Assembly (NCBI GenBank): GCA_000388065.2
Contig: KB932206.1
Source of the DNA: Fonticula alba ATCC 38817
Lineage: Eukaryota > Protista > Nucleariida
DNA length: 64,000 nucleotides
Reading direction: 5' to 3' (one strand)
Made by a program: the position numbers and the translations under genes. Positions 28,628 through 43,993 of this stretch are shown in pieces; positions within the stretch are counted from its first letter, which is position 1, and each line of letters starts with the position of its first letter. Below the pieces are notes generated by a model that saw only the letters and a list, made by a program, of their open reading frames with translations, ran no database searches and was not told the DNA's origin.

Positions 28628-30544
28628 CCCCACGCGCGGCCTCCGGAAATAGAAATTCACTTACCATGCGTGGGCAGAGGAGCATCAGAACCCGCCCCGG
28701 CTGAGGGTTGCATTTCGCCCCTTTTTTTCTTTTGCCCCCACGCCCAGGCGCGGGCGGCCGATGATATTCCACCGCGAATCCGGGCGGCCCGCGCCGCTTC
28801 CGTGCCCCGGGCGCTTCGGGGCCCGGGGGCAAGCCGGGAGAAGGGGCCTAGTCCCGCGCGGGGTGTGCCGGGCCGCCGGGGAGAATGGCCGCCCGCCGAA
28901 CGGCCTGGCCGCGTCGGGACCAGTGGGTGCCTGGTCTTCCTCCGCGGCGAGGGAGTGGCGTGAGTTCAAGTTTCGGGTGATCGGGCGCACAGGCGCCGCT
29001 GTTCATGGGCGATGCGGGGCCCCCCCCCGCAGGCGCGTGTGGCGAGCCAGTCGGGGCATTCTCCCCAGATGGATCGGGAGGAATGAGGGGTAGCCGTGCT
29101 TCGGTCGACGGATGGGAGGATGCCCAACGGAATGCGACCCCCGGTCTGCATCGACCCGGGGGCGAGCTCTGCCACAAGTAGCCCCGGCGGGTGTGAAAGG
29201 AGGGGGGGGGGGGCATCAACGTTTGAGCAGCCACAATCACGGCGCTCTTGCAGGAGTAGACGGGGCAAGGAGGACCGCGCGTGAGAGCCGTGGGCCCCCC
29301 CCCCCCCCCAGGTCCGGGAGCAGGCATAGCGGGGTGGATGCCGCCGAGGTATGTGGCCCCCCTGGGGGGGCCCCTCGCCTTGCGGTCTGTGCCAGACCGC
29401 AGGCTCATTAGTGTGCAGGCTCCGAGTCCCGGCCCGCGCACTCATGTGTGTCAGGGACAGATGAGAGAGCCCCGGGAGCTTTCCCCTCAAGTCCACTTTT
29501 TGCAGGCCGGGGCCCCAGGCCTATTTTAGCGCAGGAGGCCTGTGTCCCCCGCAGGGCGCCTGGGGCTCCCCGAGGCGGCTCCCCCGCCTCCGCGTCGCTC
29601 GTGCCCCTGAGCCTGGAGCGAGGGGTGGCCGCGGAGCCGCGGCCGTCCCTCGGACGCGCGGCCGGGGGTGGCAGTGAAGGGGGCATTTTATACGAAGCGA
29701 TGGTGCGGCGTTTGGCGTGATCGACGCCGAGGGCAGGCCCTCCGGCCGGGCCGGCGGGGTTGGCTCCAGTCTCGAAACCGGCTGGGCCCCCGCGAATGCG
29801 CGCGCCCATCCGCTCCCGCCTTCATTTCCGGCGTTCATTTAGTCTCAGCGTCCGCGGGGCCGAGGGGGGGGCGCCGTTTGGTGCGCAGCGGGCGGCGGTC
29901 GATGCGCGCGCACTCACGCCCGTTGCTCCCTGGGCCGGTGTCGCCGCCGTCGCCACTGTCGCCGCCAGGGGAAGCCCTGGCGGAGGGGCGGCGCGGAGAA
30001 GCCGCGAGCGCCGTGCGCCGGACAGTTGGCACTCTCCTTGTTGTCTCGTAATGCCGGGGCGGCAGTTGTGTCCCCGAGCGGGCGAACCGCGGGCCCCTCG
30101 GTTCGCCATGTGACGAGCAAATCTGCAAGGCCGAAGGGCGATCCCTGGCTGCGCGGTCGACGCTTCGCGGCCCGGCCGGCGGCCAGTACACCGGCTCCGG
30201 CCGGGGGCCGGGGATCCCAAGTGCCAGGTACGAGATCTGCCCAGTTGGGTGCCGACCGACGGCGATCCCTCCTTCCGAGGGCTGATATGGTGTTTCGTCC
30301 CTCATCTTGGTTATGAGTCGGCCCCTTGCCGTTGCTCCGCGGTGATCCAGGGGCCGAGGGCTGGGGAGGAGGCAGGGGGTGGATCTAAGGCGGATCGCGG
30401 CCTTTTTGCCCCTTGGCCGCCACCCCACTTTGTCTGCGCGACCTTGGGGTGCCCGCGCCCCCCTCGCCCACCCACTATTGGGCCATGCTTGGCTCGATCT
30501 CCCAGCCCCGTGCACGCTGATTTCGAGTGTGTGGCCTCCCGGCT

Positions 30545-30790
30545 GGTTCTCTCTGTATGTGTGTCTCTCTCTCTGTGTGTGTCTCTCTCTCTGTGTGTGT
30601 GTCTCTCTCTCTGTGTGTGTGTCTCTCTCTCTGTGTGTGTCTCTCTCTCTGTGTGTGTNNNNNNNNNNTCTCTGTGTGTGTCTCTCTCTCTCTCTGTGTG
30701 TGTCTCTCTCTCTGTGTGTGTGTCTCTCTCTCTGTGTGTGTCTCTCTCTCTCTCTGTGTGTGTGTCTGTCTCTCTCTCTCTCTCTGTCTC
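30545..30790. repeat. Compound (CT)n(GT)n microsatellite with ~20-bp higher-order unit, interrupted by an N-gap
   Basis: Visible ctctctctctgtgtgtgtgt iterations. Confidence 0.9.
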
Positions 30791-31002
30791 CCCCCCCCCT
30801 CTCTCTCTCCCTCTCTCGCTCTCCCTCCGCCTCCCTCCCTTTTCCGGACAACAAGGTAAAGCCCAGAAAGAAGGGCGACTCCCGACAGGCCACCAGTTGT
30901 CGCTGGAGGGTACCTTCCACTTTCTCGGCTCCGCCACCACCTCCCATTTCCTCTGCCCTTTCGCCTACCGCCCCGCCTCCCACTTTCCCTTCCCTCGCAG
31001 TC

Positions 31003-34000
31003 ATGGTGTCGCGTCGCGGGCCACCACCTCGGCTGGTGCGGCCCTCGGCCCTGCTGCTGGTGCTGGCTTGCCTTCTCGCCCCCCTCCTCCTCGGCGCCGG
31101 GATCGGAAGCGCCCTGCCCACCCCCACCGCCGCCGGCGACCGGACTCTCGCCTTCCAGGACACGCATCCTTCTGGCGGTACCTCCTCACCCGATCCTCGC
31201 CCTTCCGCACACTCGCCTGTTCTAACCCCCCCCCCCCCTGCCCCCTCGCCCGGGCTCCTCCCGCCGCAGAGGACATGTCCATCAGCAACCTCTTCTGCCC
31301 CCCTGGATCGTCGCTTCACAACTTTTCCTGTCGCAAGTGCTCGATTGCCGGGTGCAAGACATGCACCTGGTTCCAAGGGCCCGAGCAGTGTCACGCCTGT
31401 TTGGATGGCTTCTCCTCCGATCTCCCATGCACTCAATGCCCGAGCCTCTGCAAGACCTGCAGCCTGAGCCTCCACTGCACGGCCTGCAATCCCGGGGCCC
31501 TCCTTCACCGGGACACCGGGACCTGCCACAGCACCTGCCCGGAGGGCACCTTCCCCGAGGGGGACTTCTGCCAGGACTGTGGCTCCGGCTGTCAGCGATG
31601 CTCCGGCTCCGGGACCTGCGACAAGTGCCACCAGGGGGTCAGCTACTTCGGTAGCTGCGTTGCCGCCTGCCCGGAGGGGTTTGGCCTGGATGCCACGGGA
31701 CTCGTGTGTCAAGCCTGCCCGGCCGGGTGTCTTTCCTGCTCGCAGGCCGCCATCTGCCAGGTCTGCCTGCAGGGGCAGTTCGAGCACCAGGGCGGCTGTG
31801 TGGCAGCCTGCCCTGCCGGCACCGCGCCCAATGCCGAGGGGACTCGGTGCCTGCCCTGTCCGGACATGTGCACGGCCTGTACCTCGGCCGCCACCACATG
31901 CACCGCTTGCGCTCCGGGGATGCTGCTCTTCAACTTCCGCTGCGTGGCAAGCTGCCCGGCCGGCTTCTACTCGGATGGGCGGTCCTGCCTCAGCTGCAAC
32001 CTCAACAACTGCCAAGAGTGCGCCCTGCCCTCTGGCGGGTCGTCGACTCCGGTGTGTCTCTCCTGCCGCGGGGACACCATCCTCAGCCTGGATGCCCGGA
32101 TGTGTCTGAGTGCCTGCCCGAGCGGGCAGTCGGCCCACATTACCGAGGGCGTGCATCAGTGCGCCGCCTGCCCGCAAAATTGCGCCACCTGCTCCAGCTC
32201 GCCGGCCGTGTGCGATGCCTGTCAGGCGGGCTACTTCCTGTCGATGGACAGGTGCACGGCCACCTGCCCGACGGACCAGTTCGCCGATTCGACTTCTCGG
32301 ACCTGCCGGGCATGCCATGCCTCCTGCCGGACTTGCTCCGGCCAGGCGGCCGACAAGTGCACCTCCTGCCAGGAGGGCATGGTGGTCGAGGAGCCCGGGC
32401 CGGCTGGCCGGTGTGTGCCCGACTGCTCGGACCCGGGCGCCTGTCCCAGCGGGTGCTCCGAGCATTGTACCTCCTGCCGGGTGTCCCCGGGCGCCACGGA
32501 TCCCACCGACACCACGTGCCTGTCTTGCGACACGCCCTTCCTCCTGGATGGCGGTGCCTGTGTGGAGACCTGCCCTCCGGGGCATGCCAGCGCCGGAACC
32601 GGGGCCTGCTTCTCCTGCCACCCATCGTGCGCCGCCTGCACCGAGGGCTTCACCGCCTCCCAATGCACCGCCTGCCCAAGTGGCAAGTTCCTCCAGCAGG
32701 GCTACTGCCTGGATGAGTGCGATCCCGTTGGCTGGTTCCCGAGCACGACCAGCCAATGTGCCCGGTGTCATGGGTCTTGCCTCCAATGTGCCGGCTTGAC
32801 GGCCACCCATTGCACCCGATGCCCGCGTGGACGACGGCTACTCCCCGCGGCCGGGTCCGATGACCAGAACCCGCTGGGGTCCTGTGTCGAGCGTTGTCCC
32901 GATGGCTGGCACAGCAATTCCACCGGCACCAGCTGCCTGCGGTGTGATGCCAGCTGTGGCACCTGCTCCGGGCCGGCGGCCAGCCAGTGCACCTCCTGCC
33001 TGGCTGGGGGGAATCTCCACGCCGGGCAATGCCTTGCCGAGTGCCCGGCCCGGTTCTTCCCGCAGCCGTCCACCTCCGGCACTTGGAATCGGTGTGCCGC
33101 CTGTACGGCCGGCTGTGAGATGTGCACCGGCGACACGGCGGCCCTATGCGTCGCCTGCCAGCCGGGGTTCTTCGCGGTCGAGGGGGTTGGCTGTCGGGAG
33201 GTTTGTCCGGCTGGCCAGCTGGCCGACCCGGCCACCCGGCGATGCATCCCCTGCGCGGCTTCCTGCGCGGAGTGCCGCGGCTCGCCGGACTTCTGCACCC
33301 GCTGCCCGGCCGGGCAGGTGCCGAGCATCAGATCCGGCCAATGCCAGGCCACCTGCGAGGCGGATGAGATCCTCCAAGCCGGCGCCTGCCAGCCCTGCCA
33401 CCCGAGCTGCTCCGCATGCCAGACACCGAACTCCCATTCCAGTTGCACCGTCTGCCAGGACAACACCTTCCACCTGGATGGCACTTGCCATGGGAGCTGC
33501 CCGGCGGGCTTCTTCCCGGCGAATGGGCCCTGCTCCGGGGCCGGCACCGGTTCTGCCCTGCTCGGTGCCATGGCGGCCGAGAGTGGGGGGGGCACCTGCT
33601 GTCGGTGTTCGCTGGAATGTGACACCTGTGCTGGCCCGGGCAACAGGCAGTGCACCCGGTGCCCGGCCGGCAAGCTGCTTCACGAGGGCACTTGTCTTAC
33701 GGCCTGCCCGGAGCCTGGCTTTTTCCCCGATCTCGACACCGGCCGCTGCTCCAAATGCAGTGCCCTCTGCGATGTGTGCCCTGGGGGCCCGGGCACGTGC
33801 GAGCAGTGCAAGCCCGGGGCATACATGTTCACTGGGCTGAAGCCCGACCCCCAGGCCAAGGCTGGCTCCCGGGCTTCGGAGGACGTCTCGCCCATGGTCA
33901 GCCATGCCATGTGCACCTCCGTCTGCCCTGGGGGCTGGTATCCCGACAACCAGTACATGACGTGCGAGCTGTGTGCCACGGATTGCATCCAGTGCTCTGG

Positions 34001-35512
34001 GCCCACCGACCTGGACTGCCAAGTTCGCCAGTGTGATACCGACAACAGCTGCTCCTCCAGTGCGTGTCCCATGGTCCTGTTGCTTGCTGGCCGTGAGTCC
34101 TGTCCCAGGTGGGGGAGGGGGGGGGGATCTTGGTGCTCTGTCTGGGGCCTCCCCTTTTCCTGCATGAAACTGATTCCCTCCCGCAGAGACACGCTCCTCC
34201 CTGGCCATTGGGCTGTCTGTTGGCCTGCTACTGCCGATCATCATCCTCGGCATCGTGGTGTGGATTGTCCTTCGCCGCCGGCGCCAGCCCCAGCCAAAGG
34301 CCGAGGAGGCCCCCCCCTCGCCCGATGTGCGTGTGCTCTCGTCAACCATCTTTCCCGCTGCTCCCTTTTTTTTCGTTTGCATCGTGGCATGTGCACGCAT
34401 GAGTGGTTTGTGCCCCCCCCCCCCCCCCCCCTCCCGCCTCACAAGCCACCCATGCGCGTGTGTGCCCCTTGCCCCATGCACCTTGCTGGACCCCTTTTGC
34501 CTGGTGCACGGCGTCCTGGCTCCTCACCTTCCGATCGCACCGAAACACGCGCATCCATCTACCCATGAATATGACACACGCATGTGCACGCACGACAGAT
34601 GGCCGATATGACGATCCTGAACACCATCGTCGGTACGCTCCCGACCCTGCCTGCTTCCGTGCCGCGGGGGAGGCGCATGCTGCCCGCCCGTGTGTCATTA
34701 ACCAACACCCCTCTGCCATTTGGCCTCGCGCAGATCTCTCGCTTCCGGGCTTCACGCAAATTCGGATCGGCGAGGATGTCAAGGTTCTCGGGGAGGACTC
34801 GGATCTCGGGTCTGGCGCCCATGCGTCCGTCAAGAAGGCTCGCGTTTTCAAGCCGCTGCTGCTGCAGCGCGTTGGCCAGGACTTTGTGGCCGTCAAGTTC
34901 TTCACCGGTGCGTGGATAATCCCCTCGGCCCCCTCTCGTGGCCGATCGACCACCCTGGGCATTGCCCTCCTTCCGCCTCCCCTCCCTCTCCCCTGCCGAG
35001 CGTCTCCCCGCCCGGCCACACTTCCTTCCTCTGACTCGGTCGCCCCCCTCGCCTGCCCTCCCCCGCAGATGACATCTCCCCTCGACTGCTGCAGTCGATG
35101 TTTGAGATGGAGGTATCCACCCTCTGGTATGTGGTCACCCACGCAGCGCCACGCTTTTCACGCTTGCCCATGCGTGCTTGTGTCGCCCCCCCCCCCCCTT
35201 CCCTCTTCCTCTCTCTCCCTCTCCCGCTCTCAATTGCTGATCATCGTCGACTTGTCTGCCGGTTCCTCCCGGGCGCGGCCATCCCTCCCCCAAAGGGCAC
35301 TCCAAAGCTCGCCCCATGTCGCCACTCTGTACGGCTACTCCGAAAGCCCCAAGGCTTTGGTGATGAAGCTGTACGACTCGAACCTCAGCCAGCTTCTCCA
35401 CAGCTCCGAAGGCCCGGGCGACATCAGCTTGCCGATCGTCAAAAGCCTGGCCACCCAGATCAGTGCGCCATCCCCCGCCTCTTTGCTGCCCCCGACACCG
35501 GCCACCGTGCTG

Positions 35513-35550
<38 letters not shown>

Positions 35551-35926
35551 GGCCACCCCATCCCAGTCTCAGGTCTGGCGTNNNNNNNNNNNNNNNNNNN
35601 NNNNNNNNNNNNNNNNNNNNNNNNNNNNNNNNNNNNNNNNNNNNNNNNNNNNNNNNNNNNNNNNNNNNNNNNNNNNNNNNNNNNNNNNNNNNNNNNNNNN
35701 NNNNNNNNNNNNNNNNNNNNNNNNNNNNNNNNNNNNNNNNNNNNNNNNNNNNNNNNNNAGCCCCAAGGCTTTGGTGATGAAGCTGTACGACTGGAGGCGC
35801 AACCAGGGCCTCCTCAGCTCCGAGCGCCCGGGCGACATCAGCTTGCCGACCGCCAAAAGCCTGGCCACTCAGATCAGTGCGCCCTCCCCCGCCTCTTTGC
35901 TGCCGCCGACCCCGGCTACCGCGCTG

Positions 35927-35961
<35 letters not shown>

Positions 35962-36839
35962 CGGGGCCACCCCATCCCAGTCTCAGGTCTGGCGTATGTC
36001 CACTCGCAGGGGATTGCCCACCGCGACTTGAAGCCGGGGAATATCTTCCTCCACATGGACCCCGAGACGGGCGGCCTGAATGCGTGCCTCGGGGATTTCG
36101 GCCTTGCCCAGTCAGTCGATCGGTCGTCGACCCTGACCTCGACCATCTTCGCCCGCGGGGCCAGCCTCTCCTATGCTCCTCCGGAGGTGCGTCCCCTCTG
36201 CGCCTCTCGCTCTTTCCCCAAATGCCCCTGTCTTGTCCCTCTCTCCCTCTTTCGTTCTCCCTCCCCAAACCCCTCTGACGCATACACTCACACTTGCACG
36301 CACATCCCTCCCTTTGCCCCGGCTGCTGTATCGACTCCCGGCAATAGGTCCTCGAGCAGCTCCTCACCAAGACTCCCCTGGGTGATGCCTCTCGCATGCA
36401 GCTCTTCGCCGCCGATATCTATGCTCTCGGCATCATCCTTTGGGAGCTGGTCTCCACCAAGAAGGCCTGGTCCGGTGAGTGTCTCAGTCTGGCGGCGCGC
36501 CTTTCTTTCTCCCTTCTACCGCCCTGCCTTCATCCTCTCCTCGCCCTCTTCCCTCCCCCCGCCCCCCGTCTTACCTCGCGCACTTACACACTTTCTTCGT
36601 CCGGCTCCCCGCCCCCGCCCCCGCCCCACCCTTCGTTCCTCCCCAAAGGCTGCCCCCGCGACGACCTGATTCAGGGCGTCCTCCGTGGCGAGAGGCCGCC
36701 AACCACTCAGGTCGCCATTCGCTACCCCTGCACCGACCCGACGGTCTTCCTCATCATCGGCCTTGCGACCTCGTGCTGGACACAGAGTTTCAAACAACGG
36801 CCGATGGCCTCATCAGTTGAGACACTGGTCAGGCAGTAG
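31003..36839 (+). CDS. Receptor-like TKL Ser/Thr kinase 1: signal peptide, ~940-aa furin-like (CxxC) ectodomain, TM, RD kinase
   Basis: Exon 1 31003-31177 encodes a signal peptide. Exon 2 31270-34092 has repeated CxxCHxSCxxC...CxxC units. TM exon 34187-34326 (LAIGLSVGLLLPIIILGIVVWIVLRRRR); micro-exon 34599-34632. Kinase motifs LGSGAHASV, VAVK, FEMEV, HRDLKPGN, DFG, YAPPE, DIYALG and CW...RP; stop at 36839. Confidence 0.9.
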
Positions 36840-38483
36840 GGACATCACGTGAAGCGCCCGGCCATGTTCGCCCAGCCCACAACCCCTCCCGGTTGATGGG
36901 CCATCCGGCCCTTCTCCATGAGTCTTTCTCCCTCTCCCCCCCTAGAAGAGAGGGGGTCAGAGAGGATGGGGAGNNNNNNNNNNNNNNNNNNNNNNNNNNN
37001 NNNNNNNNNNNNNNNNNNNNNNNNNNNNNNNNNNNNNNNNNNNGCCGCTGCGGCCGCCACCCCCTGTGTCTCTGATGGACAACAGGGGCGGTTGCTCCCT
37101 ATTTTCCGGATCCGTCCTTGGATTACTCCTGAGAGCTGTGTCGCTTCTGGCCCCGACCTCTCAACCGACCGGCCCCTAGGGTCCATTATTCCCGGTGTCT
37201 TTTCGTGCTGTCCGCGTCTCGCCCCCCCCCCCCCCCCCCCCGTTTTCCCCTTCCGCCTTTACATTCTCGGTAGATCCATGCCCAGAGGGGGCCCCCTTCC
37301 CTGGCGGCGTTCCATGTTGTTGTTGCCCTAGAACCAGCTTTGCAGTAGAGATCCCGAGAGATTCAAAATACATTCCAACTCCCTCCACATCCTGCCGCTT
37401 GCCTGCCTGATCCCCCGATCCCAGGTGCCCTGGGATCCTGGTACCGTGGAGGATCGCGTGCTCTGCTCACCGAAATGCCGGGAGGCGCCCTTCCGGAGCC
37501 CTCACTTCCATTTGTCCATTCTTCCGGCCCTCCTGCCGGGCTCTCTGCCTCCCTCTCCCTCTGTCTCTTTCTCTCTCTCTCTCTCTCTTCCTCCGCTCCT
37601 CTTTTTCTCTCTCCTTTTCCCGCTCCAACATCTCCCCACGGGCTCAGAAGAGAACATAAAAATGTCGACACGCCGCAGGTCAGGGGCTGGGCGAATACTC
37701 CTTGGCGAACCGCGGGGTCGCAGGCCGGGGAAGGCTGAAAACATGTCTGTGGCCCGAAGGGCGCAGAATACAAGGGGAGGGGGGCCAGGCGCCGGGGCCC
37801 CAGCCCAGTGAGACCACGAGCCCGATCGCCGCCCACGCTTGCCGGGATCTTATTATTGTTTCAGATGATGACAGATTCGCCAAAAGGGCCCGTGCGCCCG
37901 ACGCTGCCACCCTGGGCGCTGGTCCGCCCCGATAAGGAGCCCGTAGCCGACCGCGGCGATCGCACCGCAGCATCTTGTGCCTTTCCGTCGACCAGCCTCG
38001 CTACTGCCCTGCCCCCCCCCCCCCCCCGTCCCTGCCCCCTGGACTTGGGCCGTCTCCTATGAGCTTCAGAGCACGTCCCCCCCGCTCACGTACAAACCCC
38101 AGTGGGACATCCAGCACCCCCGGGCCTCTGCTGACTCACCGGCAAAGAGCTCCTCAATACTCCTGAAGCCCGGTCGCTGGCTCCTCCACCCGGAGGGGCC
38201 ACACTCAGGAGATGCCGATCTGAGGGTGCACATTTCGCTGGCCGACCATTTGCTTTCGAGCCTTTCGTCTCTCACCGGCTCATGCCACCTCGTCAAGGAT
38301 CCCCCCNNNNNNNNNNNNNNNNNNNNNNNNNNNNNNNNNNNNNNNNNNNNNNNNNNNNNNNNNNNNNNNNNCCTTCCTCTCCCTCTCCCCTCCTTCCCCT
38401 CCCTCTCCCCTCCTTCCCCTCCCTCTCCCCTCCTTCCCCTTCGTCTCCCCCTGACGCCGGCCATCCCCCTGCGCCCCGGACCC

Positions 38484-41189
38484 ATGTACCCTCGTGCGGC
38501 CGAGCGACTGTGGGTCCTCTGGCTGACCGTCTGGCTGGGTGCCTGGGTCCCGGGACGCCTGGCCGCCCTTTCCCCAACTCATGGATCCCCCGCGGCCAGC
38601 GACAACCCGCTGGCCGTGACGGATTACATCCTGGATCCGGACGGCTACATGCTGATGGAGCTGCAGCTGGAGCCCCACATACTCGTGGACCCGGACTACG
38701 AGTATGATCCGCGCCTCCCATGCGACGACTCCAGCGATGGCTACACCAGGCTGTGCGAACCCCCGAAAGTCTACTACAAAAATGGCTGCGTGGACGCCTG
38801 TCCGTCGGACCATTTCATGAACCCCTTTTCGCGGGCGTGTATCCGGTGCGGGGCCAAGTGCCTGTCGTGTGACAATATGTGCTCCTGCTCCCAGTGCCAG
38901 CCGTCGTCCTACGCCTTCGGGCCCAATTGTGTGGCCACCTGCCCGGACTCGCTGGCTCCGGATCTGGAGCGGCTCATGTGCGTGCCCTGCCAGGACCGGC
39001 AGTGCCTCGACTGCTCGAGCTCGCACCGGATCTGCAAGGAATGCGCCCCGGGGCTGGCGCTGCAGGAGGGCGTGTGCGTGGATGTCTGCTCGGTCGGGTG
39101 GTACTTGACACCGACGAGCCCCACGCCAACCTGCCAGCCGTGCCATCCATCCTGCCTGGATTGCGAAACATCCAACCTGGCCACCGCCTGTACCGCCTGC
39201 CCGCCACCGCTGGTCCTGCGCCAGCCGCCAGCTCCAAGCCCCCCGGTGACGGCCAGCGACTGTGTCGAAGACTGCATGAATGACCCCTCCCAGTGTGCCA
39301 TCTGCCGGGAGGGATGCGCCTCATGCAGGCTCCGTGTCCCGGGCGGCGACCGCGAGGACTCGCTGTGCATCAGCTGCCAGACAAACTGGTACCTGCTCGG
39401 GGATCAGTGCGTCCAGGCCTGCCCCTCGAAGTATGCCCAGCTCCCGGGATTCTGCGCTCCCTGCCATGACACATGCGCCGAGTGTGCCGGCGGGTCCGGC
39501 TTCAACCAGTGCACCCTCTGTCCCCCGGGGAGCCTGCAACAGGCCGGCCAGTGCCGGGAATCTTGCGAGGTCAATGGCTGGTTCCAATCTTCCCCGACCA
39601 TGTGCAGCCGCTGCCACGACACCTGCCTCCAGTGCAACGGCCCGGCAGCCACCCAGTGCCTGGTGTGCAACCGGGGCCGGCTTCTCGTCCGGGACGCCGG
39701 CTCGCAGCGCTGCGTGTCCACCTGCCCTGCCGGCCTCTATGCCGACTATGCCATCAGCGAGTGCCTGCCCTGCTTTGGCACATGTGCCAGCTGCTCCGGC
39801 CCGGGCAAGAATGCCTGCTTCAGCTGCATAGCCGGGACTTTCCTGCACAATGGCGAGTGCCTGATCCACTGCCCGGGCGGCATGTATGGCCATGCGCCGG
39901 CCAATGGGACCGGCACCTGCCAGCCCTGCCCGACGGGGTGTGCCATCTGCTCCGGGCCCCTGGCCAGTGAATGTGGGCAATGTGTGGCCAAGTGGTTCTT
40001 CCTGCCCAGCAGTCCCGAGCCCGGCTCGGCGTCGAGTTCCAACTCGGCGTCGAGTTCCAGCTCGGCCCCAGGCTCCGGCTCGGCCCCAGGCTCCGGCTCG
40101 GCCCCAGACTCCGGCTCGGCCCCAGGCTCCGGCTCGGCCCCAGGCTCCGGCTCGGTCCCAGACTCCGGCTCCACAGCATACATTGGCATGACTCTGGGCA
40201 CTTGCTTCAGCACTTGTCCCGCCGGGACATGGGGCAACCCAACGACCAGCCTGTGCGAACCCTGTGCCGGGCTGTGCGCCGCCTGCTCCGGGCGAGTTGA
40301 TTTCTGTACCGAATGCGCCGGGCCCAGCATGTGGGCCAGCCTGGGGGGATCTTGCTCGGCGGAATGCCCCACTGGGGAGGCTCGACCCGCGCCGACACAT
40401 GCGGATTACTCGATCCGCCGGTGCCGGGCCTGCCATGCCTCGTGTGCCCGGTGCTCCCTGGCCGAGTCTCCCTCCGCCTGTGAGGCATGTCCTGTGGGGC
40501 ACTTTGCCCTGGCACCGGGGGCCTGTGTGCCTGAGTGTCCGAGCGGGTACTACGAGGCCGCGTGGGCGGCTGATCCCGGGCTTCCCGCCGCGGATCTCGG
40601 CCAATGCATTGCCTGCCCGCAGGGCTGCGACAAGTGCACCGGGCCCCCCGAATCGCAATGCATCCGATGCAAGCCGGGCCTCGTCCTCCACGAGGGCACC
40701 TGCGTGGCATCCTGTCCGGCGACCCAATTTGTCGAGGTCAATGGCGTGTGCCAGGCCTGCCCGAGCAGCTGCCTGATCTGCCGGCCGCCCGACCAGGCGT
40801 CCGGGCCCGAGCCCACGTGCAGCCGCTGCCAGGTGGATTTCTGGCTGGCCCAGGCCGAGCCCTCGGCCTCCGGCGCCAGCTCCATTGCTGGCCCCGGCAC
40901 CCTCGCATGCCTGGCCAGCTGCCCGGAGGGATGGTATGGTGGCACGCTTCCCGGGGCCGGTGGCGGTGTATGCCTGGCCTGCCATGCCAAGTGTGCCACC
41001 TGCAACGGGCCCGGCCTCGATGCCTGCCAGGTCCTCTGGTGCGAACTTGATCAGACCTGCCCCGAGGAGCCCGACAAGCGTGCGTGAATCTGAACACGGG
41101 GAGGGGGCGGGGGGGGGGAGGCTGTAGGGGCCGCACGCGGGCCACCGTGCGGTCCGCGGTCCAGGCACCCATCGGTGGCCGGCCCTGCC

Positions 41190-41220
<31 letters not shown>

Positions 41221-43736
41221 GAGAGAGAGAGGGCTCTTGACCCCCTTCCCCCCTGTTCCCCGTCGCGAGGGCCGGTCCCCCGCTGCCGGGGAAGGGATCG
41301 AGAAGAGGACGTGCGTGCGTGAGTGAGAAGAGGAGGATGCACGGGGTGCTCGCGCAGGCAGAGCCGCAGAGCCGAAGCCGGAGCCGGTACAGATTCCTCA
41401 AGGGCCCTATGCACACGGGCGACCCGCCGGAGGAAGGACAAGGGACAAGGGGCGAAGCCGAGTAACGCGCCGTTTCCCACTTGTCCCCAGGGTTTCTCCC
41501 CGGCCCCTGGTCGGGCGACGGGCAACGGGCAACACTTGAGGCCGCCGGCAGGAGGGAGAGGTGATAGGCCGGGCTGGGACCGGGGGGGCGCTGGGGGGGG
41601 TCCCAACGCGGGGGGGGGGGGGGGGGGGGGGTGCTTTCGCTTGCCCGGGCCTTTCTGACGCCCTCACCCCGGCACAAACATCAGCCTCCAGCGCCCGTTT
41701 GGAGATCATCATCCCGGCCAGCGTGGTGTCGGGTCTGGTGGTTCTCCTTCTGCTGGCGGCCGTGGTGGTTTTGCTGTACTCCCGATCCTCGAGGCGCTCG
41801 ACGGCGACCAAATCCCGGCGGGATATCGACCCGGCCGACAGCGAGTCGGCACAGCTCGTGCGTTGGGGGACGCCCCTTGCCACATCTCCGGCCCTTTTCC
41901 TGGGCTTGTCCCGCTCACCACTCGCCCGCTTCGCTCCCGTTCCCCCGGCCCAGAGCTACGACATGACCGTGCTCAATACCATCACCCGTACGCAGAGGCG
42001 GCTCGGTCCATGGACACGGGCTGCTGCCGATCCTCGCACGCACCGCCACTACTGCCCCGCGACACATTATGCCCACCGTCTGACACTCGGGCCCCGCTTC
42101 CGACGCCTCCGCCACCACCGCCACCGCCCTGCCAGACCTTTCGCTCCCCGGCTTCCTGCTGGTCAATTTGGACATCGACTTCTACCGCGACAAAGCGCCC
42201 ACCGAGGAGGAGGACGACGCCCTCCTCGGCCAGGGGTCCCAGGCCAGCGTCTACAAGGCGCGCATCCTGTCCCAGGCGTGTCGCCAGCGGGCCGACAGCG
42301 AATGGGCCGCCATCAAGCTCTTCAACAGTGCGTCATATGCCCCCCCCTTAGGCCCCTGGCGCCGGTGCTGGAGACCTCATCGCCTCTCCTTGCAGACTAA
42401 CATGCCTGCCCGTCCATTGGCCAGGCTCCCTGCTGCCCAGCGATGCGGAGGGCGCCTTCCAAAATGAAGTGTCCATCATGTGGTACGTTGAGTCCTCCGC
42501 CGGCCTGCCCTTGCCCTCCTGTCCTCCCCCGAACACGGTCGGACACACACACACACACACACATGCATGCATACATGCATGCATGCACAGACGCATGCAC
42601 GTAAGCCATCCGTCTGACTCCCTCCTGTCCTTAGGGCACTTCAAGGGTCGCCACATGTGGCCCGGATGATCGGCTACTCCGCCACGCCTCGAGCTATTGT
42701 CATGACGTACTACAGCGAAAACCTGGAGAACCTCCTTCACCGAGACGAGATCGAACTTGACAGTGTCAATACCTTCCGCGTGGCAAGCGATGTTGGTGCG
42801 TTGAGCATGGGCATGTCCCCATGTCCGAGTCACGAATGCCCGGCGGCCCTCTCGCTCGTCGGCCGTTGCCCGCTGCCCCCGCCCCTGTCTCTCCCTCTCG
42901 CGCTCTCTCTGCTTTTTTTTCCAGCGACTCACATCATCGATGGCGGCCAATGGCCGGCACTTTGGTCACCAGTCAACGGCATGGTCTTCCTCCATGGGGA
43001 AGGGATTGCCCATTGCGACTTGAAGCCCGGCAATGTGCTGCTGTCGGTTTGCACGCAAACCGGCCGGCTGAGCGGCGTGCTGACGGACTTCGGCGTTTCG
43101 CGTGCCGTGGCCCGGGAAACAACCCTCACCATCAAAACCGAGATCGTCGGCATGAGCATCAAATTCGCCTCGCCCGAGGTTCGCACACGCCCACATCGCC
43201 GCCCCCGCCCACACACTCCGCCCTGACGCCCTGCCACTTGCCACCGACAACCCACCATGCGTTGCAGATGATCCGCATTTTCACCCTGCCCAAGGGCGTT
43301 TCTCGCGTCGAGGCGACCATCTTCCTGGAGTCCGATATCTACGCCCTCGGGATTCTCCTCTGGAGTATGGTGTCCAAGTCGACCCCGTGGAAGAGTACGC
43401 CGGGAGGCTTTGTCCACTCCACCGCTCGTGCCATTGACGTGCCGCCATCCATGCTAACGCCCCTTCCTTTGACTTTCTTTGTCTGTCTCCCTCTCTCCTC
43501 CCCTCCTCCGCGCCCTTGCTCTCTCCCTCGCTCGAACAGACCTCTCTACGACCGAGATCCAGACCATGGTCCTGTCCGATCAGCGCCCACCTGTTGACCA
43601 GGCGGCCATCCGCCTGGACTTGGATGCCCCGCATGTCCGGTCACTGCTCGACCTGGCGGTGAGATGCTGGAACGGCGATCGCAGCATGCGCCCGACATAC
43701 ACAGACCTTGTGGGGCTCGAGTGGCTGACGCAATAG
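38484..43736 (+). CDS. Receptor-like TKL Ser/Thr kinase 2: signal peptide, furin-like (CxxC) ectodomain, TM, non-RD kinase
   Basis: Signal peptide MYPRAAERLWVLWLTVWLGAW; Cys-repeat exon ends at 41079. TM exon from 41685 (IIIPASVVSGLVVLLLLAAVVVLLY); micro-exon 41954-41987. Kinase motifs LGQGSQASV, AAIK, FQNEV, HCDLKPGN, DFG, FASPE, DIYALG and CW...RP; stop at 43736. Confidence 0.9.
40061..40172 (+). repeat. 18-bp coding tandem repeat encoding (SAPGSG)n in the kinase 2 ectodomain
   Basis: About six units of ctcggccccaggctccgg, with GAC/GTC variants. Confidence 0.9.
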
Positions 43737-43993
43737 CCTCGAGCTTGGGCACATTGTGACGGCCCTGGCAGGAGTTGCCCCGTCACAGCACACACAAAGA
43801 GAGGGAGAGAGCGCGCGCGCGAACCCCATGTGCACAGCCATTCCTTGCTCCCCTCCCTCCGCCGGAAAATGAATCGAAGAAAAAACAACACACGATGCAC
43901 ATCCTTACACTGCCACATGGGGGGGGGGGGGGACTTCATGTTGCTACACAGGCAATCTGCTTGGCTCCCGTCCCATGGACAGGTGGCTGGCCA

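What the first reader, a model, noticed from the sequence alone, without database searches (positions are those of the whole stretch)
31003..43736. Tandem pair of furin/CxxC-repeat receptor kinases, one RD and one non-RD: candidate receptor/co-receptor sensing module
Seen: two adjacent, same-strand genes share one architecture (signal peptide, roughly 850-950 aa of CxxC furin-like repeats, single TM, TKL-type Ser/Thr kinase). Intron positions through the kinase domain are essentially the same, so they are paralogues, but the ectodomains have diverged strongly. Kinase 1 has HRDLKPGN and kinase 2 has HCDLKPGN. Known: Dikarya fungi essentially lack such single-pass receptor kinases. CxxC ectodomains occur in Entamoeba transmembrane kinases and Giardia VSPs, and plants pair non-RD pattern receptors with RD co-receptors (e.g. 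FLS2/BAK1). Inference: this may be a lineage-expanded surface-sensing system (prey, kin or aggregation recognition) in an amoeboid relative of fungi, with a possible RD/non-RD division of labour.
Basis: partly seen in the sequence, partly recalled or inferred. Interest (0 to 1): 0.8.

Follow-up and report, generated by a model that had tools for sequence, protein, structure and literature searches.

The report
Two neighbouring Fonticula surface receptor kinases
Two real, expressed neighbouring genes of the amoeba Fonticula alba each encode a cysteine-rich surface receptor joined to a kinase. They are ordinary members of a family of at least 60 such genes, and I found no support for the idea that this pair works as a receptor and co-receptor.

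Summary
The window is Fonticula alba scaffold KB932206.1. Gene 1 (31003-36839, 10 exons, 1353 aa) is identical to XP_009496040.1. Gene 2 (38484-43736, 9 exons, 1247 aa) matches the annotated neighbour in span and length. Each has a signal peptide, a CxxC/furin-like ectodomain (about 990 and 870 aa), one TM helix, a conserved juxtamembrane motif on a 34-nt micro-exon, and a B-Raf-like (TKL) kinase. Gene 1 has HRDLKPGN and gene 2 has HCDLKPGN. All other catalytic residues are intact in both.

The gap at 35582-35758 lies inside an intron. A spliced RNA contig joins 35462 to 35981 (GT..AG) in frame. The DNA right of the gap is a redundant, divergent copy of exon 7 plus intron. The other two gaps lie outside the coding sequence. 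Both genes are transcribed.

The receptor/co-receptor reading is not supported. Among 61 family representatives, 27 are HRD, 26 HCD and 6 other. R versus C is one base (CGC/TGC) and changed at least 11 times on the family tree. Four of six adjacent pairs are mixed, against about three expected by chance. Gene 1 has the longer ectodomain, unlike a BAK1-type co-receptor. The scan had already noted this family on other pieces of this genome. The family is interesting, but this pair is ordinary within it.

The parts
31003..36839 (+). Gene 1, an RD receptor kinase of 1353 aa = XP_009496040.1. Exons: 31003-31177, 31270-34059, 34187-34326, 34599-34632, 34734-34907, 35069-35126, 35296-35462, 35981-36186, 36348-36474, 36649-36839.
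   Evidence: RNA contig X10 record 1 gives six GT..AG joints. The model equals P0188 exactly.
31003..34059 (+). Gene 1 signal peptide and ectodomain, with one 92-nt intron at 31178-31269. The ectodomain is 993 aa with 145 Cys and 52 CxxC.
   Evidence: Pfam Furin-like_2 82 bits and VSP 60 bits. Cys counts and hydropathy.
34187..34326 (+). Gene 1 TM exon, with the helix at about residues 999-1017.
   Evidence: Kyte-Doolittle peak of 2.85. Exon borders from the RNA contig.
34599..34632 (+). Gene 1 34-nt micro-exon encoding the juxtamembrane motif MADMTILNTIV.
   Evidence: RNA joints 34326>34599 and 34632>34734. T, N and T are invariant in 37 family members.
35463..35980 (+). Gene 1 intron 7 as assembled. 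It contains assembly gap 35582-35758 and a redundant copy of exon 7 plus intron at 35759-35980. The true intron is probably about 104 nt.
   Evidence: The RNA contig joins 35462 to 35981 with no mismatches. The two flanks align at 86% identity, and the left flank already reads into exon 8. No run was listed that holds the right-hand copy.
35981..36186 (+). Gene 1 catalytic exon: HRDLKPGN (H at 36019, R codon CGC at 36022-36024), DFG and APPE.
   Evidence: Pfam Pkinase 49 bits. Motif scan and codons.
38484..43736 (+). Gene 2, a non-RD receptor kinase of 1247 aa. Exons: 38484-41079, 41685-41857, 41954-41987, 42136-42327, 42425-42482, 42635-42795, 42973-43178, 43268-43394, 43540-43736.
   Evidence: The model rests on GT-AG sites and homology to gene 1. 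The annotated gene has the same span and 1247 aa. It scores 254 bits against the family HMM. An RNA contig covers 38411-40000. RNA runs hold 0.39-0.43 of the words of 41000-43800, against 0.37 expected for fully spliced mRNA.
41954..41987 (+). Gene 2 34-nt micro-exon encoding SYDMTVLNTIT.
   Evidence: Same length and phase as in gene 1.
42973..43178 (+). Gene 2 catalytic exon: HCDLKPGN (H at 43011, C codon TGC at 43014-43016), DFG and ASPE.
   Evidence: Pfam Pkinase 39.6 bits..
36974..37043 (.). Assembly gap 135 nt downstream of the gene 1 stop codon, in the 3'UTR or intergenic region.
   Evidence: RNA contig X10 record 2 covers 36764-36973 and stops at the gap.
38307..38371 (.). Assembly gap 113 nt upstream of the gene 2 ATG, outside the observed transcript.
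   Evidence: The RNA contig of gene 2 ends at 38411, and the only ATG between 38411 and 38486 is at 38484.

Best explanation
These are two independent, functional type I receptor Ser/Thr (TKL-like) kinases. They are old paralogues, about 39% identical, from the intron-rich basal branch of a large Fonticula alba family, and they have stayed next to each other.

Each protein is predicted to display a long, disulfide-rich stalk of furin-like/CxxC repeats outside the cell. This is followed by a single membrane pass, a family-specific juxtamembrane motif (TxxNT...LPG) and a catalytically competent kinase.

The likely mechanism is inferred, not shown. A ligand or surface contact would cluster receptors, the kinases would phosphorylate one another, and the signal would pass inward. 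The RD form (gene 1) probably depends on activation-loop phosphorylation. The HCD form (gene 2) may be regulated differently. This difference is a common, easily flipped family polymorphism rather than evidence of an obligate pair.
For: - Gene models: the gene 1 model equals XP_009496040.1. Gene 2 matches the annotated 1247-aa neighbour.
- Expression: spliced RNA contigs exist for both genes in the same 2012 RNA run.
- Domains: Pfam domains score above their cut-offs.
- Catalytic residues: K, E, H-D, N, D(F/L)G, PE, D and R are invariant across 37 family members whatever the R/C state. Both window genes have them.
- Fold: the AlphaFold model of the gene 1 cytoplasmic part has pLDDT 90.4. Its nearest solved folds are B-Raf and C-Raf, TM up to 0.86. 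The best sequence match in the PDB is B-Raf at 8e-18.
- Family census: 27 R, 26 C, 6 other, with at least 11 R/non-R changes on the tree.
- Adjacency: four of six adjacent pairs are mixed.
- Age of the pair: kinase and ectodomain are both about 39% identical. A constrained tree with the two as sisters is not rejected (p-AU 0.65), which fits an ancient tandem duplication.
Against: No ligand, substrate, localisation or interaction data exist. The signal peptide and TM helix rest on hydropathy only. Gene 2 splice sites downstream of 41079 are inferred from homology, matching length and RNA word share, not from laid reads. The adjacency sample (six pairs) is too small to exclude a modest enrichment of mixed pairs, and one array reads R-C-R. 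The sister relation of the two genes is unresolved and involves long branches.
Confidence: 0.72

Rival explanations
1. Receptor/co-receptor module. The non-RD gene 2 binds a ligand and recruits the RD gene 1, which trans-phosphorylates it, as FLS2 or EFR do with BAK1 in plants.
For: The pair is RD plus HCD, on the same strand and 1.6 kb apart. Both are transcribed in the same RNA run. HCD is the same non-RD form as in plant immune receptor kinases, and non-RD kinases are linked to innate immune receptors (PMC8463890). An R-C-R array exists on KB932209.1.
Against: Half the family is non-RD. The R/C state changed at least 11 times. Mixed neighbours are not enriched: four of six against about three expected, and C-C and R-R neighbours also exist. 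Gene 1 has the longer ectodomain, not a short shared one. RNA contig depths differ about ten-fold (8.8 versus 99.5), although contig depth is a poor measure of expression. Many family members are singletons (P0034, P0153).
Confidence: 0.1
2. Adhesion or matrix-contact receptors. The rigid cysteine-rich stalks mediate cell-cell or cell-substrate contact during collective feeding or fruiting, and the kinase reports contact rather than a soluble ligand.
For: The long repetitive ectodomains resemble surface coat and lectin proteins: the Pfam VSP hit and the similarity of the Entamoeba Igl lectin to TMKs (PMC2880585). Gene 2 carries a Ser/Gly/Pro-rich spacer at 40044-40154. The organism is aggregative.
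Against: No adhesion domain was detected. There are no expression data across life stages. This is not exclusive of the best explanation.
Confidence: 0.15
3. One of the two is a pseudogene or an assembly artefact, suggested by the gap and duplicated exon in gene 1.
For: A gap lies inside gene 1 and is flanked by an 86% identical duplicate of exon 7. Related genes show the same assembly problem (P0037). One relative truly lacks the catalytic exon (P0035).
Against: A spliced RNA contig crosses the region in frame with zero mismatches. The full ORFs are intact and all catalytic residues are present. No run was listed that holds the duplicate copy.
Confidence: 0.03

Closest known systems
Other Fonticula alba CxxC/furin-repeat receptor kinases, annotated 'TKL protein kinase' or 'serine/threonine protein kinase' (e.g. 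XP_009497792.1 = P0183, P0001, P0034)
   Same: Same architecture, same juxtamembrane motif and same kinase family (family HMM scores of 251-254 bits). P0034 and P0035 have the same intron positions.
   Different: Only 30-39% identical to any other member. The two genes belong to a small basal, intron-rich clade with DFG. Most of the family has larger proteins (1700-3500 aa), DLG, few kinase introns and sits in dense arrays.
Entamoeba histolytica transmembrane kinases (EhTMK families A-F)
   Same: Signal peptide, CXXC-rich ectodomain of about 900 aa resembling Giardia VSPs, one TM helix, a cytosolic TKL-like kinase, and a large gene family (about 90 genes) (PMC2880585).
   Different: No Entamoeba protein appeared among the named hits of my searches, so common descent of the whole architecture is not shown. 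It is probably a convergent assembly of shared domains in a different supergroup.
Plant RD/non-RD receptor kinase pairs (FLS2 or EFR with BAK1)
   Same: A single-pass receptor Ser/Thr kinase with an HCD catalytic loop next to an HRD relative. [quoted passage not shown]
   Different: The ectodomains are furin-like, not LRR. The RD partner here has the longer ectodomain. No evidence of heteromerisation. The R/C state is evolutionarily labile within the family.
B-Raf/C-Raf kinase domain (TKL group)
   Same: Best sequence match (8e-18) and best structural match (TM up to 0.86, 25-28% identity) for the gene 1 kinase.
   Different: RAF kinases are cytosolic with Ras-binding and C1 domains. Here the kinase is fused to a receptor.
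Animal receptor tyrosine kinases with furin-like Cys-rich domains (EGFR, insulin receptor)
   Same: Pfam GF_recep_IV and Furin-like repeats, a single TM helix and an intracellular kinase. RTK kinase domains are among the structural matches.
   Different: No L domains were detected. The catalytic loop is the Ser/Thr type DLKPGN, not the tyrosine-kinase type (established kinase signatures).

Membership tests
Eukaryotic protein kinase (Pfam PF00069) | Pfam Pkinase match above the gathering score | tested here: met
   The catalytic exons alone score 49.2 bits (gene 1) and 39.6 bits (gene 2) against a cut-off of 31.7.
Eukaryotic protein kinase (Pfam PF00069) | Catalytic residues: beta3 Lys, alphaC Glu, HxD Asp, catalytic-loop Asn, DFG Asp, APE, subdomain XI Arg | tested here: met
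   All are present in both genes and invariant in 37 family members. The Gly-rich loop is GxGxxA/Q, with the third Gly replaced.
TKL group of kinases | Closest characterised kinases are TKL members | tested here: met
   B-Raf is the top PDB sequence hit at 8e-18. B-Raf and C-Raf are the top fold hits. Paralogues are named TKL by NCBI. No formal kinome-HMM classification was run.
Furin-like / growth-factor-receptor cysteine-rich repeat proteins | Pfam PF15913, PF14843 or PF03302 above the cut-off | tested here: met
   Gene 1: Furin-like_2 82 bits and VSP 60 bits. Gene 2: Furin-like_2 49 bits and GF_recep_IV 44 bits.
Type I single-pass receptor | N-terminal signal peptide and exactly one TM helix between ectodomain and kinase | tested here: met
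   Each protein has one Kyte-Doolittle peak at the expected place. Gene 1 has an N-terminal hydrophobic core. The gene 2 N-terminus is W/L-rich but below my threshold. No dedicated predictor was available.
Fonticula CxxC receptor-kinase family | Juxtamembrane TxxNT...LPG motif plus the family kinase profile | tested here: met
   Both genes have the motif on a 34-nt exon. Family HMM scores are 251 and 254 bits.
RD/non-RD receptor plus co-receptor system (plant FLS2/BAK1 type) | One partner is non-RD and the other RD | tested here: met
   HCD in gene 2 and HRD in gene 1.
RD/non-RD receptor plus co-receptor system (plant FLS2/BAK1 type) | The RD partner is a short-ectodomain co-receptor shared by many receptors | tested here: not met
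   The gene 1 ectodomain is 993 aa, longer than that of gene 2 at about 872 aa.
RD/non-RD receptor plus co-receptor system (plant FLS2/BAK1 type) | Non-random association of RD and non-RD members | tested here: inconclusive
   Four of six adjacent pairs are mixed, against about three expected from 27 R and 32 non-R. The sample is small.
RD/non-RD receptor plus co-receptor system (plant FLS2/BAK1 type) | Ligand-induced heterodimerisation and trans-phosphorylation | not testable with these tools
   Needs biochemistry.
Entamoeba TMK family | Homology of the kinase and ectodomain to EhTMKs beyond shared domain types | tested here: inconclusive
   No Entamoeba protein was among the named hits. Those searches are word-limited, and the exhaustive search carries no names.
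Animal receptor tyrosine kinases | Tyrosine-kinase catalytic-loop signature and L domains flanking the furin-like region | tested here: not met
   The catalytic loop is DLKPGN. Pfam found no Recep_L_domain.

The most novel reading that the evidence does not exclude
The family as a whole has at least 61 diverged members. Half carry the HCD non-RD catalytic loop typical of plant pattern-recognition receptors, and all keep an intact catalytic core and a unique juxtamembrane motif. It could be a recognition repertoire for prey, kin or microbes in a fungal relative, evolved independently of plant and animal systems. In that repertoire, RD and non-RD members would form heteromeric signalling pairs, and the window pair would be an old, stable example.
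Probability: 0.1. Interest if true: 0.8.

Novelty: new member of a known kind. Interest (0 to 1): 0.38.

Why it matters
Fungi lack receptor kinases (PMC6733946), but their amoeboid relative Fonticula alba carries dozens. I found no paper describing this family in the searchable library. The pair shows that even the small, basal members are transcribed and catalytically intact, and that loss of the RD arginine is a recurrent one-base switch in the family. This constrains ideas about what non-RD kinases mean outside plants and animals. For this particular finding the practical result is mostly negative. The assembly gap does not break gene 1, both genes are already annotated, and the adjacency of an RD and a non-RD kinase is what chance predicts.

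Tried and rejected
- Finding the window's own proteins with the search for homologous proteins. The ectodomain query and the P0001 kinase-region query returned neither window protein. Gene 1 surfaced only in the exhaustive HMMER search. Gene 2 never received a protein id, so it could be studied only as exons or in scripts.
- RNA-seq raw reads of 'organism B' (X20, X21). Reads lay only on poly-C tracts and gave chimeric joints at 34413-34435 and 37220-37242. X5, the DNA run with the same label, holds this sequence only as short low-depth contigs. Organism B is therefore probably another organism with Fonticula as a minor component. I discarded these runs as evidence about expression.
- DNA contigs of X5 to bridge the gaps. 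None spans any gap.
- My first gene 2 start at 38478 was wrong by two codons. It is corrected to 38484.
- The 61-row quick tree placed gene 1 nearer to P0183 than to gene 2. A constrained search with the two as sisters had a higher likelihood, so I do not claim either topology.
- dN/dS between the two genes was not attempted. At about 39% protein identity, synonymous sites are saturated.
- Mutually exclusive exon 7a/7b as an explanation for the duplicate right of the gap. I consider it unlikely. The RNA contig uses only the left copy, the left flank already continues into exon 8, and no run was listed that holds the right copy.


Full report
**Identity of the window.** Protein hits name Fonticula alba. 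Locus L008, fetched for protein P0188, is letter-for-letter identical to the window, with L008 position 10001 equal to window 31003. It comes from GCA_000388065.2 scaffold KB932206.1. The DNA is 60-70% G+C.

**Gaps first.** The window has N runs at 35582-35758, 36974-37043 and 38307-38371. I laid four runs on 34001-40000.
- A 1130-nt spliced contig of a 2012 RNA run (X10 record 1) lies without mismatch on 34001-34059, 34187-34326, 34733-34906, 35295-35462, 35981-36184 and 36346-36475. Further joints mark the small exons at 34599-34631 and 35068-35125.
- The contig passes directly from 35462 to 35981, so gap 1 lies inside an intron and the reading frame continues.
- Aligning the two flanks of gap 1 shows that 35759-35980 is an 86% identical second copy of the 3' part of exon 7 plus the poly-C intron. 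The left flank (to 35581) already reads through the intron's end into the first 15 bases of exon 8. The true intron is therefore probably about 104 nt, and the gap is an unmerged overlap.
- No public run was listed that holds the words of the right-hand copy, whereas many runs hold the neighbouring gene.
- Gap 2 starts 135 nt after the gene 1 stop codon. An RNA contig covers 36764-36973 and stops at the gap.
- Gap 3 ends 113 nt before the gene 2 ATG. The gene 2 RNA contig ends at 38411, and the only ATG from there to the start is at 38484.
- No DNA contig bridged any gap.

**Gene models.** Gene 1 has 10 exons from 31003 to 36839 and encodes 1353 aa. This model is identical to P0188 = XP_009496040.1 / KCV69475.1, 'serine/threonine protein kinase'.

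For gene 2 I chose GT-AG sites that keep the frame and match gene 1. After correcting the start to 38484, the model gives 1247 aa. That is exactly the length and span of the annotated neighbour.

From the ectodomain end to the stop, the exon lengths are:
- gene 1: 140, 34, 174, 58, 167, 206, 127, 191 nt
- gene 2: 173, 34, 192, 58, 161, 206, 127, 197 nt

All eight introns are in equivalent positions. The same positions occur in P0034 and P0035 on other scaffolds, while P0001 has lost three of them. The intron pattern is therefore ancestral to a subfamily and not special to this pair.

**Expression.** Four RNA runs of 2012 hold 0.39-0.43 of the sampled words of 41000-43800. Fully spliced gene 2 mRNA would give about 0.37. 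In run X10, gene 1 and gene 2 contigs have word depths of 8.8 and 99.5, which is only a rough guide. Both genes are transcribed.

**Domains.**
- Ectodomains: 993 aa with 145 Cys and 52 CxxC in gene 1, and about 872 aa with 108 Cys and 38 CxxC in gene 2.
- Pfam: Furin-like_2 (82 and 49 bits), VSP (60 bits, gene 1) and GF_recep_IV (44 bits, gene 2), all above the cut-offs. Pkinase scores 49 and 40 bits on the catalytic exons alone.
- Membrane topology: one strong TM peak in each protein.
- Juxtamembrane motif: a 34-nt micro-exon encodes MADMTILNTIV in gene 1 and SYDMTVLNTIT in gene 2, followed by LSLPG. T, N, T and P of this motif are invariant in 37 family members.
- Catalytic core: the beta3 Lys, alphaC Glu, H-D, Asn, D(F/L)G Asp, PE, Asp and Arg are also invariant. 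Both window genes carry them.
- Fold: the AlphaFold model of the gene 1 cytoplasmic part is confident, with pLDDT 90.4 and pTM 0.90. Its best structural matches are B-Raf and C-Raf, followed by receptor tyrosine kinases. B-Raf is also the best sequence match in the PDB at 8e-18. 'TKL-type' is therefore reasonable.

**RD versus non-RD.** Gene 1 has H-R-D with codon CGC and gene 2 has H-C-D with codon TGC.

An exhaustive profile search followed by filtering for a CxxC ectodomain and the family kinase gave 61 representatives. Their HxD states are 27 R, 26 C, 2 G, 2 K, 1 L, 1 Q and 2 undetermined. On their tree the R/non-R state changes at least 11 times. Changes occur even between very close paralogues, such as P0036 (R) and P0038 (C), and the adjacent sisters P0037 (R) and the 1778-aa gene (C).

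The adjacent kinase pairs whose states I could read are:
- window: R-C
- KB932205: C-C
- KB932210: R-R and R-C
- KB932209: R-C and C-R

That is four mixed pairs of six, against about three expected. Several members are singletons. The window pair is what chance predicts. In addition, gene 1 does not have the short ectodomain of a shared co-receptor.

**Relationship of the two genes.** They are about 39% identical in both the ectodomain and the kinase. Local BLAST is colinear only from the membrane-proximal ectodomain onwards. Both lie in a basal nine-member clade, with SH-aLRT support of 83. A tree constraining them as sisters is not rejected and even scores better (p-AU 0.65). This fits an ancient tandem duplication but does not prove one, because the branches are long.

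**Neighbourhood.** Upstream lie small genes with ATG27/mannose-6-phosphate-receptor, NDUFS4 and FHA domains. Downstream lies a DEAD/helicase-family gene on the other strand. The pair is not part of a large array.

**Beyond Fonticula.** Related receptor kinases (VSP/furin-like repeats, fn3, TM, the same kinase profile, all RD) occur on metagenome contigs. One of these contigs carries Rad21/Rec8, COPI-associated and LYRM genes, so it comes from an uncultured eukaryote.

**Literature.** Four searches on Fonticula with the terms receptor kinase, TKL, kinome, or genome/aggregative/receptor found no description of this family. PMC6733946 reports no receptor-kinase architectures in fungi. The Entamoeba TMKs are the nearest described architectural analogue (PMC2880585). 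The link between non-RD kinases and innate immune receptors is stated in PMC8463890.

Earlier notes of this scan describe the same family on other pieces of this genome, including arrays of giant members and an estimate of about 60-95 genes. My own census agrees in order of magnitude.

**Verdict.** The genes are already annotated and are ordinary members of their family.

Noticed in passing
L007:13271-15302 (P0035, H696_05856, scaffold KB932214.1): This family member keeps the TM helix, the juxtamembrane micro-exon and both kinase lobes. It lacks the exon that carries the HxD, DFG and APE motifs: only 117 nt separate the flanking exons, and the locus has no gap. It looks like a natural pseudokinase receptor.
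   Followed up: partly
L005:16663 and L005:20658 (P0037, scaffold KB932209.1): The annotated P0037 protein contains the same kinase segment twice, on either side of a 3.2-kb N run. This is the same kind of duplicated-flank assembly artefact as at window 35582-35758. It inflates the annotated protein with an internal ectodomain-like insert.
   Followed up: partly
L009:9603-14276 and L010:3103-7776 (ENA metagenome contigs): An uncultured eukaryote (neighbouring genes Rad21/Rec8, COPI-associated, LYRM2) encodes a 1557-aa intron-less receptor kinase. It has VSP/furin-like repeats, fn3 and the same kinase profile. Four further metagenomic representatives (P0210, P0215, P0202, P0260) group with it, and all five are RD.
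   Followed up: partly
window 38001-38200: RNA contigs of run X10 (summed depth about 17) lie between the two genes, upstream of gap 3, with long loose ends at 38007 and 38012. This may be an unannotated transcript or a spliced 5' leader of gene 2.
   Followed up: no
window 40044-40154: The gene 2 ectodomain is interrupted by a 37-residue Ser/Gly/Ala/Pro-rich stretch of APGSGS-like units, possibly a flexible or O-glycosylated spacer. Gene 1 has none.
   Followed up: no
window 34602: An independent 2025 DNA run (X5) reads A instead of G, changing Ala to Thr in the juxtamembrane micro-exon (MADMT to MTDMT). Three more differences and a 1-nt insertion lie in introns or intergenic DNA. This indicates another strain in that sample.
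   Followed up: no
window 34413-34435 and 37220-37242: Poly-C tracts attract poly-C-containing reads from RNA-seq runs labelled as another organism. They produce false 'joints' of about 2.8 kb and strand switches. This is a trap when reading laid reads on this genome.
   Followed up: yes
L011 and L005 (KB932209.1, about 38-91 kb): Three family genes stand in a row on one strand with HxD states R (P0163), C (1778 aa) and R (P0037). The last two are close sisters (support 97/96) that differ in R versus C.
   Followed up: partly
window 29835-32810 (-) and 39321-41606 (-): Long antisense ORFs (991 and 761 aa) lie opposite the two ectodomain exons. They are most likely a by-product of the high G+C content and the repetitive Cys codons.
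   Followed up: no
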